Positions 39,301 through 63,415 of a DNA stretch of 64,000 nt are shown here, piece after piece. Every line of letters starts with the position of its first letter. Within the stretch, counting starts at the first letter, position 1. Origin of the DNA: Octopus sinensis (taxonomy: Eukaryota); the NCBI RefSeq assembly GCF_006345805.1, contig NC_043001.1, forward strand, positions 26,970,001 through 27,034,000. The letters run 5' to 3'. The position numbers and the translations under genes were made by a program. The notes beneath the pieces are model-generated. The model ran no database searches and had not been told where the DNA came from. It saw only the letters and a list, made by a program, of their open reading frames with translations.

Positions 39301-42300
39301 TGTGAATGCCTCAGTGAGGGAGAGAGTTCTAGAAGAATGTGGTTCTGAGTAGAAAGGATTGAGTAAAGTAATTAGCACAGGGTTTGGTGATGATACACAA
39401 TAAAGACAATGGAGAGAAAATGGACATTTATATCAAATGGACATTTTTCATGTAGTGATGGTTATGGGAGTGACCAACTGACAGGGAGATGGTATATTTG
39501 TTGAGAATGGGATGGAGTTTGGAGAGGCATAATGTACCATGAACATAAAACCAATGAGTAGAAAAGAAGCTGAAACAGTGAGCTTGAGTAGAGATGGGTA
39601 AGAGATATAAAGTGCAAAATTTGTGCCTCAGAAATGCTTGAACAGACAAGCTGTCAATTATTAGGAATTAAATGAAAATGTGATACATCTCAGCTATACT
39701 TTATTAGTCATATTTACATATCCTTAAAGCTTGACCAGAAGTGGGATGAAACTTTATTATCAACTGTAGGTTATTTTCACAAATGATACAGTTTAATTTA
39801 TTTTACACACGTACAGAATTGTGACAACCTTATTATAATCATATATTCAAATTTAAATATAGCCACTTGCATTGAATTAAAATCATTTCAATTATTATAC
39901 ATACCACAATCTTTTTCATCTTCACCATCAGGGCAGTCATTTTGTCCATCACATTTCCAACTCAGTAAAATGCAGCTGTTATAATGAAATTTTGTTCATA
40001 TAGAAATCAACTTAAGCAATATTTGCATGTGTATTTTGATTTATTGCTTTTTGAGAAGGAAATATTTTTCTAGTTGATGAAAGGAAATATTCATTCTAGT
40101 ATGTGATCAAGAGAAAAATACATTGCATGAAAAACCAGACACACTTTTACACTCACAGCTAATATGTTCACCTTTCATAAGATTATAACAATTATGTTTT
40201 TCCTCCAAACTACGTTATAACATACTATTGAAACATATTCATTGCTTATGAATATTAAAATGGTTAATAGAACAAGAAAGAAAAAATGAGTTATCTTACC
40301 TCTTTGTGGCTGTACAATACATTTCATTAACTCGACAGTCCAGGGAAAGAGTTGTTGTAACTGGAGCTTGTGTAGTTGTAACTCTATCTGAAATAGTCAG
40401 ACAAATCTTTTAACTTTTATCATTTACTTGCTTCAGTCATTTGACTAAATCCTTCAGCAGTGCTCCAGTCATGTTGGGGTACTGTTTGAAGGGCTTAGTC
40501 AAATAAATTGGCCCCAGTTCTTATTTTTAAAATCTCATACTATTTCTATCAGTTGATTGTGCTATGCCACTAAATTTCAGGGACATTAACAAACCAACAC
40601 TGGTTGTCAAATGTCAGTGGAGAGAGAAACACAAACACAAATTCACATAAACACACATATTATAACGCAATGAGCTTCTACCCACCAAGCAAATCCGCTC
40701 ACAAGGCACTAGTTGGGTTAGGGCTATTGCTCAATGTGTCCTGTAATGGGACTGAACCTAAAACCATGTGATAGACATTAAATTGCAAAATGAAAACTAA
40801 AATATTCGTAAACATCAAAATATCATTGGCTTGTAAGAATTCATTGGTTACTTAAAAACTGATTCATATTTTTGCTTTTAATGTGTCAGGTTTCTTTCTT
40901 ACTGTAAATTATTTCATTAATCAGGAATCAGTAATCAACAACATGAAAGTGAGAGTTGCAATTGATCATCATTTTCATTTTAAAGTCCATTTTTTTCTTT
41001 TTTGCATGGATCAGACAGGATTCTTTGAGAGAGATTTTTCCATAGCTTGATGCCTTTCCTGTTGTTAACCCTCACCTTTTTCCAAGCAAGTTATTAAACT
41101 CCTAGTTTGTTAAACAATGAACAGCCCAGATGTGATTTTGTGGCTGACTGCAAGCATGAGACATCACCTGTGATGTTTGCAGTTGGTGAGGATGATGAGA
41201 GAAAGAAACTCACTGAGACAAACACATACATGCACAGAAACACACACACACGCACACACACACATGCACACACACATGCACACACCCATGTATATGTGTA
41301 CATACATACATACATACATACAACGACCACACATCATTAGAGTACTGCTTCCATACATCGAATGTTACACCAATCATCTCATGCATGCACACATGTACAC
41401 ATGTATACAAATAATGCAAAATAATTTATTTTACTCAGTTACTGGATTGTGACAAGCTTGTTATAATTATATTTACAAATTCAAATATAGCCAATTGCAT
41501 TGAATAAAAAATCATTTTAATTATTATACATACCACAATCTTCCTCATCTTCTCTCATCAGGGCAGTCATTTTGTCCATCACATTTCCAAGCCAGTGGAA
41601 TGCAGTTGCTATGAGGAAATTTTGTTTATTTAGAAATCAACTGAAGCAATACATGTGTGTGTATTTTGATTTATTGTTTTTGAGAAGAAAATATTTTTTG
41701 TCTAGTTGATGAAAGAAAATATTCATTCTAGTATGTGATAAAGAGAAAAATTCCTTGCATGAGAAACCAGAGATACTGTTATAGTCACATCTAATCTATA
41801 TATATATAAAGCTGAAGTTGTCTGTGTGTGGCAGGTTTGGTAGCCTTCAACTAACATTATCTCCTCTGAGATCCTGCGGCGCAAGTTAACTAAAATTGAG
41901 AGTCTGATAGAAGAAGGTTTGCTCTTCATTCCATAGAAGATAAAATTCAAATTGGACCAAGTTAAGACCAAAATCATTTAGATCAAAAAGGTGCTTTTTC
42001 TCTATGAAAATCCCTATTTTTTACGATTTTTTGACTGCTGTGTTGCCATTTGTTGGTGTATTTCAACTAGAAAGATGTTCACTTAAAGAGAATAACAAGC
42101 TACATAATGCCAAATGTTTAGTTTTCAAAAATTTCAATTCTAAAGGGTCAAAACAAACCCGAGCAACGCTGGGCAATGCCGCTAGTAATATGTAACAGAA
42201 AGTTGTGTTCAACTTTCATAAAGTTATAGCAAGATTTGCTTTTCGTTCTACTACTTTATAACATTCTATTGAAACGTATTCAATGCTTATGAATATTAAA

Positions 42301-63415: not shown

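What the first reader, a model, noticed from the sequence alone, without database searches (positions are those of the whole stretch)
39905..63415. Array of split, phase-symmetric LDLa cassettes that permits mix-and-match in-frame splicing
Seen: every LDLa except the last is encoded by a first-half exon (phase 1 to 2; 52-130 bp, all 3n+1) and a second-half exon (phase 2 to 1; 71 or 74 bp, 3n+2, apart from the 75-bp frameshifted copy). There are seven sense cassettes, one orphan half and one antisense cassette. Any first-half exon spliced to any downstream second-half exon keeps the frame and gives a six-Cys chimeric LDLa, and whole cassettes can be skipped. The variable residues cluster around the first Cys pair and in the CIx(L/P)xW segment. 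Established: LDLa domains are Ca2+-dependent ligand-binding modules, and combinatorial splicing diversifies invertebrate receptors (e.g. arthropod Dscam). Inference: this may be a diversifying, modular recognition protein whose binding-module number and sequence vary by splicing and by copy number.
Basis: partly seen in the sequence, partly recalled or inferred. Interest (0 to 1): 0.72.

Follow-up and report, generated by a model that had tools for sequence, protein, structure and literature searches.

The report
Duplicated two-exon LDLa array, octopus protease-like gene
The split LDLa cassettes are real, but they are the recently duplicated and partly decayed front end of an octopus neurotrypsin-like protease-homologue gene; nothing in the sequence shows Dscam-style mix-and-match splicing, although the cassette exons do differ more than the introns around them.

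Summary
On the minus strand there are seven two-exon LDLa cassettes: first halves of 52-130 nt (all 3n+1) and second halves of 71 or 74 nt, plus one frameshifted 75-nt copy. There is also one orphan first half and one inverted cassette. All exon ends are canonical AG/GT, and every spliced cassette scores 44-49 bits against Pfam Ldl_recept_a.

The array is the 5' part of a gene spanning more than 57 kb: LDLa(n)-PAN-LDLa-SRCR-LDLa-SRCR-trypsin-like. Its O. bimaculoides orthologue is annotated as two adjacent models, 'VLDL receptor' and 'neurotrypsin'. The catalytic serine is replaced (GDDGGP) in both species.

Frame compatibility between any 'a' and any 'b' exon follows from tandem duplication of one symmetric unit, so it is not evidence for combinatorial splicing. 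I found no docking/selector-like complementarity and no extra intron conservation. The orthologous gene models string cassettes in series.

The array is young and unstable. It holds a 3-kb direct duplicate (about 99%), a 3.3-kb inverted duplicate (about 98.7%), an orphan exon, a second-half exon overrun by (TTC)45, and a frameshift.

Between young copies, exons carry 4-6 times more differences than introns (p=1.7e-5 and 8e-4). This fits selection for cassette diversity or exon-biased gene conversion.

The parts
63364..63415 (-). Cassette 1, first-half exon (52 nt, phase 1->2), no Thr linker
   Evidence: orthologous to the first LDLa of O. bimaculoides P0121
61658..61728 (-). Cassette 1, second-half exon (71 nt, phase 2->1)
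   Evidence: 87% aa identity to P0121 cassette 1
57291..57342 (-). Cassette 2, first-half exon (52 nt)
56157..56227 (-). Cassette 2, second-half exon (71 nt)
   Evidence: 92% aa identity to P0121 cassette 2
54100..54274 (-). Remnant of a second-half exon: the donor-side intron is still recognisable, and the exon body is replaced by (TTC/GAA)44.7
53732..53859 (-). Orphan first-half exon (near-copy of 4a); acceptor intact, donor lost at the edge of the inverted segment
52784..52892 (+). Antisense cassette, first-half exon (109 nt)
53224..53294 (+). Antisense cassette, second-half exon (71 nt); its peptide is identical to the O. bimaculoides [23 protein letters not shown] exon
50071..50200 (-). 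Cassette 4 (A-type), first-half exon (130 nt; 3.4 copies of the 21-nt linker repeat)
49667..49737 (-). Cassette 4, second-half exon (71 nt), identical to 6b
48295..48379 (-). Cassette 5 (B-type), first-half exon (85 nt)
47489..47562 (-). Cassette 5, second-half exon (74 nt; one extra codon, Asn)
44113..44221 (-). Cassette 6 (A-type), first-half exon (109 nt); donor GTACGA
43711..43781 (-). Cassette 6, second-half exon (71 nt)
42340..42424 (-). Cassette 7 (B-type), first-half exon (85 nt)
41534..41608 (-). Cassette 7, second-half exon (75 nt): a 1-nt insertion relative to 5b causes a frameshift and stop
40300..40387 (-). Cassette 8 (A-type), first-half exon (88 nt)
39905..39975 (-). Cassette 8, second-half exon (71 nt)
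41261..44216 (.). Direct segmental duplicate (cassettes 7+6) of 47213-50174 (cassettes 5+4); 98.9% identity by blastn; 29 differences in 2956 nt
47213..50174 (.). Partner of the direct duplicate (cassettes 5+4)
43444..46785 (.). Arm 1 of the inverted duplicate (contains cassette 6 and its upstream intron)
   Evidence: 45 differences in 3342 nt
50210..53743 (.). Arm 2 of the inverted duplicate (contains the antisense cassette); starts 9 nt from the 4a acceptor and ends inside orphan exon 3a
38666..38764 (-). Exon after the array ([10 protein letters not shown]...; limits approximate), same order as in O. bimaculoides P0001/P0003/P0121
36759..36908 (-). PAN/apple-domain exon (limits approximate)
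35179..35283 (-).
28295..30123 (-). SRCR domain 1 in two exons (29974-30123 and 28295-28489)
26886..26996 (-). Second unsplit LDLa exon
20081..24505 (-). SRCR domain 2 in two exons (24350-24505 and 20081-20260), followed by a Thr-rich stretch
6200..17580 (-). Trypsin-like domain exons (17338-17580, about 15221-15355, 13399-13605, 10374-10562, about 6200-6359). His and Asp are present; the catalytic Ser is replaced by Asp (GDDGGP, 10410-10433). There is a 1-nt frameshift near the C-terminus.

Best explanation
The region is the 5' part of one large minus-strand gene, running from about 6.2 kb to beyond 63.4 kb, with its 5' end outside the window. The gene encodes a mosaic, secreted-type protein: a run of LDLa modules, then PAN, LDLa, SRCR, LDLa, SRCR and a trypsin-like domain that lacks the catalytic serine. 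It is therefore a neurotrypsin-like serine-protease homologue.

Each LDLa module of the N-terminal run is encoded by a two-exon unit with an old phase-2 intron before Cys3. The array grew by repeated tandem duplication of that unit, which is why every 'a' exon is frame-compatible with every 'b' exon. In the younger A- and B-type cassettes, the 'a' exon also carries a 21-nt in-frame minisatellite. It encodes Thr-rich, probably O-glycosylated spacers of variable length.

Shown here:
- The exon anatomy and the domain identities.
- Orthology to the O. bimaculoides 'VLDLR' + 'neurotrypsin' pair.
- Recent direct and inverted segmental duplications.
- Decayed copies.
- A different cassette order in the sister species.
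- An excess of differences in exons between young copies.

Inferred:
- The cassettes are normally spliced in series, giving a protein with about six LDLa beads on mucin-like strings.
- Diversity arises at the DNA level through unequal crossing-over, duplication, conversion and selection on the N-terminal lobe of each module, much as in a coding multi-exon VNTR, rather than through regulated combinatorial splicing.
- The protein acts as a Ca2+-dependent binding or recognition factor rather than as an active protease.
For: - Exon coordinates, lengths, phases and canonical splice sites.
- LDLa calls for every spliced cassette.
- Downstream PAN, LDLa, SRCR and trypsin exons on the same strand.
- Closest proteins are O. 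bimaculoides P0003 ('VLDL receptor'), P0001, P0121/P0122 ('serine protease 12/neurotrypsin') and P0142 ('neurotrypsin').
- P0003 and P0142 are adjacent on the same strand of CM046605.1, in the same order as in the window.
- The O. bimaculoides locus has the same split cassettes and the 21-nt repeat. Its order is different (A, A, [gap], B, A), and it has eight N-runs including one of 6 kb inside the array.
- Cuttlefish PRSS12 (P0149) has four LDLa modules of the same C-x6-C...GEDE subtype in series.
- Self-alignment shows 2966 nt of direct duplicate at 98.9% and 3367 nt of inverted duplicate at 97.7% by blastn. Global alignment gives 29/2956 and 45/3342 differences.
- Decay: frameshifted 7b, orphan 3a, (TTC)45-replaced b exon.
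- Differences are concentrated in exons: 11/180 against 34/3162 (p=1.7e-5) and 10/335 against 19/2621 (p=8e-4).
- For cassette 6 against the antisense copy, the core pN is 0.071 while the intron between the two exons differs by 0.009.
- GDDGGP is present in the window and in P0142.
Against: - No transcript of this species could be examined, so serial (constitutive) inclusion is inferred only from gene models of a sister species. Those models are themselves predictions across gapped assemblies.
- If the 7b frameshift is real, serial inclusion gives a premature stop. A full-length product from this haplotype would then need cassette skipping or a 7a->8b join.
- The gene carries a second 1-nt frameshift in its last exon. 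It may be decaying, or the assembly may carry indel errors.
- The exon excess includes synonymous differences, so it is not clean evidence of amino-acid-level selection.
- The numbers are small: 9-11 exon differences per comparison.
Confidence: 0.7

Rival explanations
1. The array is a substrate for regulated combinatorial splicing. Any first half can be joined to any downstream second half and whole cassettes can be skipped, giving many LDLa variants from one gene, as Dscam does.
For: - All a/b combinations are in frame and give six-Cys domains.
- 'b' exon acceptors have purine-rich, weak-looking tracts, and the 6a donor is GTACGA.
- If the 7b frameshift is real, only skipping or a 7a->8b join gives a full-length protein.
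- The inverted duplicate would bury cassette 6 in double-stranded RNA and loop out cassettes 4 and 5, which could force skipping.
- Tandem exon duplication is a known source of alternative splicing (own knowledge).
Against: - Frame compatibility is inherited from duplication, and serial inclusion is equally in frame.
- There is no mutual-exclusion feature: introns are at least 324 nt and all GT-AG.
- No shared complementary element of 15 nt or more was found in the sense part of the array. There were six 13-14-nt matches, about the chance number.
- Cassette introns diverge from O. bimaculoides by about 9-10%. Other introns of the gene diverge by 5-11%, so there are no conserved intronic regulators.
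- All three sister-species models contain several cassettes in series with adjacent halves paired.
- P0003 appears to join an A-type first half to a B-like second half. That join spans a 6-kb N gap and cannot be produced by canonical splicing of the exons present.
Confidence: 0.07
2. The youngest copies are assembly artefacts. Cassettes 4+5 against 6+7, and/or the inverted segment with the antisense cassette, would be two haplotypes or chimeric long reads laid side by side. The true array would then be shorter (1, 2, A, B, A).
For: - Identity of about 99% is within the range of allelic divergence in marine invertebrates.
- The same locus is riddled with N gaps in the O. bimaculoides chromosome assembly, so it is hard to assemble.
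- Two 1-nt frameshifts in the coding sequence could be indel errors.
Against: - The copies are not identical. Their differences are concentrated in exons and are mostly non-synonymous, unlike polishing noise.
- The direct copies are separated by 3 kb of sequence that is not part of that repeat, and the junctions fall at specific points (9 nt from 4a, inside 3a).
- Older copies such as cassette 8, which differ by about 10-12% in the intron between their two exons (about 87.5% identity over the 1.8-kb unit), show that the array was already multi-copy.
Confidence: 0.15
3. The locus is a decaying gene in this genome. The array is rearranging because constraint has been lost, and the exon differences reflect relaxed selection plus gene conversion rather than adaptive diversification.
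For: - Frameshift in 7b, 1-nt frameshift in the last exon, orphan exon, (TTC)n-destroyed exon and inverted cassette.
- Catalytic Ser lost.
- Trypsin-like exons have pN/pS of about 1-2 against O. bimaculoides.
- Synonymous sites in cassette exons also exceed intron divergence.
Against: - Relaxed constraint alone gives exon divergence equal to the intron rate, not 4-8 times higher.
- All other exons are open, with intact splice sites.
- SRCR1b is under strong constraint, with pN/pS 0.07.
- The six Cys and the Ca2+-cage residues are kept in every intact cassette.
- GDDGGP is shared with O. bimaculoides, so Ser loss is old and compatible with a working protease homologue.
Confidence: 0.15

Closest known systems
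Human LPA kringle IV type 2 repeat (coding, two-exon, about 5.5-kb copy-number-variable unit; PMC4378929, PMC6314250)
   Same: - One disulphide-knotted module is encoded by two exons.
- The whole unit, including introns, is tandemly repeated at high identity inside a protease-related gene.
- All copies are in frame and spliced in series.
- The array is hard to assemble.
   Different: - The units here are heterogeneous (A and B types, about 2.2 and 3.8 kb).
- They carry an internal 21-nt linker repeat and include inverted and dead copies.
- Their exons differ more than their introns.
- Copy-number variation among individuals was not tested here.
Drosophila Dscam1 variable exon clusters (mutually exclusive splicing through docking site/selector RNA pairing; PMC3535345, PMC8791459)
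   Same: Tandemly duplicated, frame-compatible exons encoding parts of a binding domain. Variable residues are concentrated in part of the module.
   Different: - In Dscam1 only one exon of a cluster can be used, and the choice is enforced by conserved RNA pairings.
- Here, inclusion of all cassettes gives a normal multi-LDLa protein.
- No shared complementary elements were found.
- Orthologous gene models include several cassettes in series.
Neurotrypsin/PRSS12-like mosaic proteases, Drosophila Tequila and arthropod serine-protease homologues (own knowledge; names)
   Same: A C-terminal trypsin-fold domain is preceded by SRCR and LDLa modules. The nearest annotated proteins carry these names. 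Like the arthropod homologues, the active-site Ser is missing.
   Different: - No kringle was seen; the N-terminus lies outside the window.
- A PAN domain and a long, expanded LDLa array with Thr-rich linkers are present.
- The protein is predicted to be catalytically inactive (GDDGGP).
LDLR-family ligand-binding repeats (LDLR, VLDLR, ApoER2), including known skipping of repeat exons and the O-linked sugar region (own knowledge)
   Same: Serial LDLa modules with 1-1 phase symmetry. Whole-module skipping keeps the frame. A Ser/Thr-rich O-glycosylated stretch is present.
   Different: - Those repeats are mostly one exon each; here each module is split by a phase-2 intron.
- No EGF/YWTD, transmembrane or NPxY parts were found, so the 'VLDL receptor' label of P0003 is a domain-level name only.
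Accelerated evolution of exons relative to introns in duplicated toxin and defence genes, such as snake venom PLA2 and conotoxins (own knowledge)
   Same: In young paralogues the introns are nearly identical while the coding exons have accumulated many, mostly non-synonymous, differences.
   Different: Here the paralogues are exon pairs inside one gene. The counts are small, and synonymous sites are also elevated, so gene conversion is not excluded.

Membership tests
LDL-receptor class A domain (PF00057) | About 40 residues with six conserved Cys, scoring above Pfam's gathering threshold | tested here: met
   Each spliced cassette scores 43.9-48.7 bits against a cut-off of 24.1. The 315-aa concatenate gives six matched stretches at 203.9 bits.
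LDL-receptor class A domain (PF00057) | C-terminal acidic Ca2+ cage (W-x-C-D-G-x-x-D-C-x-D-x-S-D-E) | tested here: met
   W, D, G, D and D-E are invariant or nearly so across the aligned modules. Ser is replaced by Glu (G-E-D-E) in this subtype, and cassettes 4 and 6 have N for the x-D-x Asp.
Dscam-type mutually exclusive exon cluster | Only one exon of the cluster can be included; inclusion of neighbours is prevented or is incompatible with the protein | tested here: not met
   Serial inclusion is in frame and is what P0001, P0003 and P0121 show. Introns are at least 324 nt and all GT-AG.
Dscam-type mutually exclusive exon cluster | Conserved docking-site/selector complementary intron elements | tested here: inconclusive
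   No exact reverse-complement match of 15 nt or more was found outside the large inverted duplicate; six 13-14-nt matches are about the chance number. The upstream constitutive intron is outside the window, and imperfect pairings were not modelled.
Dscam-type mutually exclusive exon cluster | Many isoforms observed in transcripts | not testable with these tools
   No transcript or protein of the window's own species was returned by either protein search.
Coding multi-exon tandem repeat of the LPA KIV-2 kind | A unit of two exons plus introns, repeated head to tail at high identity and in frame | tested here: met
   Units 7+6 against 5+4 are 98.9% identical over 2966 nt. Unit 8 against unit 6 is 87.5% over 1.8 kb.
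Coding multi-exon tandem repeat of the LPA KIV-2 kind | Copy number varies among individuals | not testable with these tools
   Only a between-species difference in order and number was seen, and the O. bimaculoides array is interrupted by gaps.
Neurotrypsin/PRSS12-like mosaic serine protease | SRCR domains followed by a C-terminal trypsin-fold domain | tested here: met
   Pfam SRCR and Trypsin hits lie on ordered minus-strand exons. Identity per exon to O. bimaculoides 'neurotrypsin' P0142 is 79-90% for the SRCR2b and trypsin-like exons.
Neurotrypsin/PRSS12-like mosaic serine protease | Intact catalytic triad His-Asp-Ser | tested here: not met
   AAHC and DIAL are present, but the motif is GDDGGP instead of GDSGGP (GAT codon, 10410-10433). 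The same holds in P0142, and cuttlefish P0149 has GDIGEP.
Neurotrypsin/PRSS12-like mosaic serine protease | N-terminal kringle (vertebrate neurotrypsin) | tested here: inconclusive
   No kringle hit was found in the window, but the gene's 5' end lies beyond position 64000.
LDLR/VLDLR receptor family | EGF-precursor/YWTD propeller, transmembrane segment and NPxY tail after the LDLa repeats | tested here: not met
   The exons downstream of the array are PAN, LDLa, SRCR and trypsin-like. No PF00058 or EGF hit was found.

The most novel reading that the evidence does not exclude
The array is an actively diversifying recognition module in a mucus- or haemolymph-type protease homologue, with selection keeping cassette exons different while their introns stay nearly identical.

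The 3.3-kb inverted copy would not be junk under this reading. In the pre-mRNA it would pair with cassette 6 over about 3.3 kb at 98.7% complementarity and loop out cassettes 4 and 5.

In a coleoid cephalopod with very high ADAR activity, this could drive A-to-I recoding of cassette 6. It could also force skipping or circularisation of the looped cassettes.
Probability: 0.08. Interest if true: 0.75.

Novelty: new member of a known kind. Interest (0 to 1): 0.38.

Why it matters
The practical gains are these:
- Two separate O. bimaculoides gene models ('VLDL receptor' and 'neurotrypsin') are probably one mosaic gene.
- Its protease-like domain lacks the catalytic serine.
- The 'mix-and-match' property is inherited arithmetic, not a mechanism.

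The scientifically interesting residue is modest but real. This is a young, unstable, multi-exon coding repeat in which the binding-module exons differ several-fold more than the introns between them. That is the pattern seen in genes under pressure to diversify. If population and cDNA data confirmed it, the locus would be a tractable case of copy-number-driven and sequence-driven diversification of a Ca2+-dependent binding array in a cephalopod. It would also be a natural test of what a kilobase-scale intragenic inverted repeat does to splicing and RNA editing in an animal with heavy editing.

Tried and rejected
- **Transcripts of the same species.** Two database searches returned only O. bimaculoides relatives (P0001, P0003, P0121, P0122, P0142). 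No protein encoded by the window itself came back, so isoforms could not be checked.
- **P0003 as evidence of chimeric splicing.** It appears to join an A-type first half to a CIPLIW second half. I rejected this because the join spans a 6-kb N gap, the locus does not translate to the protein, and the present B-type exon would add an Asn.
- **Cuttlefish orthologue.** I tried to fetch its DNA to date the intra-LDLa intron. The gene range (about 159 kb) was too long and no DNA was returned.
- **O. bimaculoides cassette 3.** I looked for an orthologue of CPPDKMKC...WRCDGSADC in the window and found none.
- **Docking/selector-like complementarity.** Nothing above chance was found.
- **Extra intron conservation next to cassettes.** None was found.
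- **Plain dN/dS.** The numbers are too small, and synonymous sites are also elevated. I therefore relied on the exon-versus-intron contrast and did not claim positive selection outright.
- **A simple inversion as the origin of the antisense cassette.** Un-inverting the segment does not restore a regular array, so the event was more complex.
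Full report
**What is there.** The window is AT-rich animal DNA (about 35% GC), and its nearest protein matches are from Octopus bimaculoides. A motif scan of all six frames found nine C-I-x-L-x-W-K-C-D-G-type LDLa second halves, eight on the minus strand and one on the plus strand. 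It found matching first halves upstream of each.

- Seven minus-strand cassettes. The 'a' exons are 52, 52, 130, 85, 109, 85 and 88 nt, all 3n+1. The 'b' exons are 71 or 74 nt, 3n+2.
- One 75-nt 'b' exon (7b, 41534-41608) with a 1-nt insertion relative to its twin 5b, which runs into a stop.
- One orphan 'a' exon (53732-53859).
- One complete cassette on the opposite strand (52784-52892 and 53224-53294).

Every exon end is a canonical AG or GT. Spliced in pairs, each cassette is a six-Cys LDLa domain scoring 44-49 bits against Pfam PF00057, whose cut-off is 24.1.

The lengths of the 'a' exons differ because of a 21-nt in-frame tandem repeat encoding [14 protein letters not shown] heptads. It is present in 1 to 3.4 copies, giving the series 88, 109 and 130 nt. 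A further 'b' exon once lay upstream of the orphan. Its donor-side intron is still recognisable, but the exon body is now a (TTC)44.7 microsatellite (54143-54274).

**What gene it belongs to.** Downstream on the same strand lie, in order:
- an exon [10 protein letters not shown]... (38666-38764);
- a PAN domain exon (36759-36908);
- an unsplit LDLa (35179-35283);
- an SRCR domain in two exons (29974-30123 and 28295-28489);
- a second unsplit LDLa (26886-26996);
- a second SRCR domain (24350-24505 and 20081-20260);
- five trypsin-fold exons reaching down to about 6200.

The best database matches are O. bimaculoides 'serine protease 12/neurotrypsin' (P0121, P0122, P0142) and a 209-aa 'very low-density lipoprotein receptor' (P0003). 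P0003 consists only of cassettes of this type plus the DYTLDNFEKQ exon.

P0003 and P0142 lie next to each other on the same strand of chromosome CM046605.1, at 22.770-22.805 Mb and 22.721-22.769 Mb. This is the same order as in the window, so they are most likely one gene split by assembly gaps.

The trypsin-like domain keeps His (AAHC) and Asp (DIAL) but reads GDDGGP where the catalytic Ser should be. This holds in the window and in P0142, and the cuttlefish relative P0149 reads GDIGEP. The product is therefore a serine-protease homologue, not an active protease, and the name 'VLDL receptor' is only a domain-level label.

**How the array arose.** Self-alignment shows three layers of duplication:
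- 41261-44216 (cassettes 7+6) and 47213-50174 (cassettes 5+4) are direct duplicates with 29 differences in 2956 nt.
- 43444-46785 (cassette 6 plus its upstream intron) and 50210-53561 are inverted duplicates with 45 differences in 3342 nt.
- The cassette-8 unit is an older copy, about 87.5% identical to the cassette-6 unit.

The inverted segment begins 9 nt upstream of the 4a acceptor and ends inside orphan exon 3a, which explains the missing donor.

The O. bimaculoides locus has the same split cassettes with the same intron position and the same 21-nt repeat. Its order is different (A, A, gap, B, A), and it has eight N-runs including 6 kb inside the array. The cuttlefish PRSS12 protein has four LDLa modules of the same subtype in series.

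The two-exon unit is therefore old. The array has been expanding and rearranging recently, and it is hard to assemble.

**The splicing claim.** It is true that any 'a' exon joined to any later 'b' exon stays in frame. This follows automatically from duplicating one unit whose two exons have phases 1->2 and 2->1. The whole unit is a classical 1-1 symmetric module.

The sequence-level tests available to me do not support a Dscam-like mechanism:
- Serial inclusion is in frame, and all three sister-species models show it.
- Introns are 324-1635 nt and all GT-AG, so neither steric nor spliceosome-type exclusion applies.
- Outside the big inverted duplicate there is no exact reverse-complement match of 15 nt or more in the array. 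Six matches of 13-14 nt is about the chance number. By contrast, Dscam1 relies on conserved docking/selector pairings (PMC3535345, PMC8791459).
- Cassette introns are no better conserved between the two species (9-10%) than other introns of the same gene (5-11%).

P0003 seems to join an A-type first half to a B-like second half. That junction spans a 6-kb gap and cannot be made from the exons present, so it is not evidence. No transcript of the source species was reachable, so splicing itself is untested.

**What does support 'diversifying'.** Between the young copies, differences pile up in the exons:
- Cassette 6 against the antisense copy has 11 differences in 180 exon nt and 34 in 3162 non-exon nt (Fisher p=1.7e-5).
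- Cassettes 7+6 against 5+4 have 10 in 335 and 19 in 2621 (p=8e-4). Leaving out the repeat region, where register shifts are possible, gives p=0.04.
- For the 40-codon cores, cassette 6 against the antisense copy gives pN=0.071 and pS=0.092. The 331-nt intron between the two exons differs at 0.9%.
- In the N-terminal lobe, all six within-window A-type comparisons show 3-6 non-synonymous and 0 synonymous differences.
- The same trend appears between O. bimaculoides cassettes A1 and A3, with 14.0% in exons against 10.3% and 7.3% in flanking introns.
- Between species, cassette 8 against its likely orthologue differs by 10.7% in exons. This is no less than the introns, whereas the SRCR1b exon of the same gene has pN/pS=0.07.

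The antisense 'b' exon still encodes exactly the O. bimaculoides peptide, while 4b and 6b carry derived changes. Most change therefore seems to be on the functional copies.

There are caveats. Synonymous sites in the C-terminal lobe are also elevated. The pattern could reflect gene conversion, or old exon divergence retained while introns were homogenised. The counts are also small. Either reading implies something other than neutral drift acting on the exons.

**Decay and doubts.** The array holds a frameshifted exon, an orphan, a microsatellite-destroyed exon and an inverted cassette. The gene's last exon has a further 1-nt deletion that puts the conserved [12 protein letters not shown] tail out of frame. 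The trypsin-like exons have pN/pS of about 1-2 against O. bimaculoides.

This leaves two rival readings, each at roughly 15%. One is that the youngest copies and the frameshifts are assembly or haplotype artefacts. The other is that the gene is decaying in this genome. If the 7b frameshift is real, a full-length product from this haplotype would need cassette 7 to be skipped or 7a to be joined to 8b. That is the one sequence-based argument in favour of non-adjacent joins.

**A consequence worth testing.** In the pre-mRNA the two inverted arms would form about 3.3 kb of nearly perfect duplex. Cassette 6 would lie in the stem, and cassettes 4 and 5 (46786-50209) in the loop. In a coleoid cephalopod, where A-to-I editing is unusually heavy (own knowledge), this could cause editing of cassette 6, or skipping or circularisation of cassettes 4 and 5. 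I rate this as unlikely to be functional (about 8%), but it is cheap to test with RNA-seq.

**Comparison with known systems.** The closest analogue in kind is the human LPA kringle IV-2 repeat. It is a two-exon, about 5.5-kb coding unit that varies in copy number and is spliced in series (PMC4378929, PMC6314250). The domain family is LDLa, and the gene family is the neurotrypsin-like or arthropod-type serine-protease homologues. The exon-faster-than-intron pattern recalls duplicated venom and defence genes (own knowledge). 'Neurotrypsins' have been reported in the O. vulgaris skin-mucus proteome (PMC11431876). That is compatible with a secreted binding role, but it does not identify this gene.

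**Verdict.**
- Observation: confirmed.
- Interpretation: partly supported. Copy-number and sequence diversification are plausible; combinatorial splicing is not supported.
- Novelty: new member of a known kind.
- Interest: moderate to low (0.38).

Noticed in passing
window 10410-10433 (minus strand): The trypsin-like domain of the same gene reads GDDGGP, so the catalytic Ser is replaced by Asp (GAT). O. bimaculoides P0142 has the same motif, and cuttlefish P0149 has GDIGEP. These 'neurotrypsin' annotations are probably inactive protease homologues.
   Followed up: partly
window ~6200-6300 (minus strand): The last coding exon has a 1-nt deletion relative to the O. bimaculoides reading. In frame it ends ...[12 protein letters not shown], while the conserved [12 protein letters not shown] tail is in another frame. 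This is a second frameshift in the gene, either real or an assembly indel.
   Followed up: partly
window 54143-54274: A (TTC)44.7 microsatellite sits where a second-half LDLa exon should be. Only the donor-side intron of that exon survives, so the GAA-rich end of the exon seems to have expanded and destroyed it.
   Followed up: yes
L001 (O. bimaculoides CM046605.1, 22.770-22.805 Mb) and L002 (22.721-22.769 Mb): The 'very low-density lipoprotein receptor' (P0003) and 'neurotrypsin' (P0142) models are adjacent, on the same strand and in the same order as the window's single gene. L001 is 53% N (18143 of 34208 nt). They are probably one gene split by gaps.
   Followed up: partly
window 59918-60337 (-), 62735-62962 (+), 21907-22224 (-): Transposon remnants lie in introns of the gene. 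One is a mariner-type transposase fragment (PF01359, 55 bits). The others are a weak integrase-core match and a weak retroviral-type aspartyl-protease match, both below Pfam thresholds.
   Followed up: partly
window 27500-28120: An imperfect trinucleotide repeat of about 530-620 nt lies in the intron between SRCR1 and the second unsplit LDLa. It reads as poly-Leu, poly-Cys or poly-Ala/Val depending on frame.
   Followed up: no
window 6958-7353, 8512-8786, 9252-9527, 10868-11122, 12812-13027, 15826-16053, 24552-24809, 31738-32640 and others: A short interspersed element recurs many times in both orientations. Its translated signature is ...HHHH LTS(A/V)[10 protein letters not shown](L/P)GSG(K/E)P...[18 protein letters not shown]. 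It even contaminates the O. bimaculoides model P0121 (residues about 639-700).
   Followed up: no
window 46328-46576 (-) and 50413-50661 (+): An 83-codon open frame with C2H2-like CxxC...HxxxH spacing lies in the duplicated intron, in both arms of the inverted repeat. It has no Pfam match.
   Followed up: partly
window 34564-34817 and 58969-59222: A 254-nt inverted repeat pair (96% complementary) lies 24 kb apart within the same gene. It is probably two copies of one interspersed element.
   Followed up: no
window 17338-17580, 10374-10562, 6267-6359 against L002: The trypsin-like exons have pN/pS of about 1-2 between the window and O. bimaculoides, while SRCR1b has 0.07. Constraint along the gene is very uneven.
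   Followed up: partly
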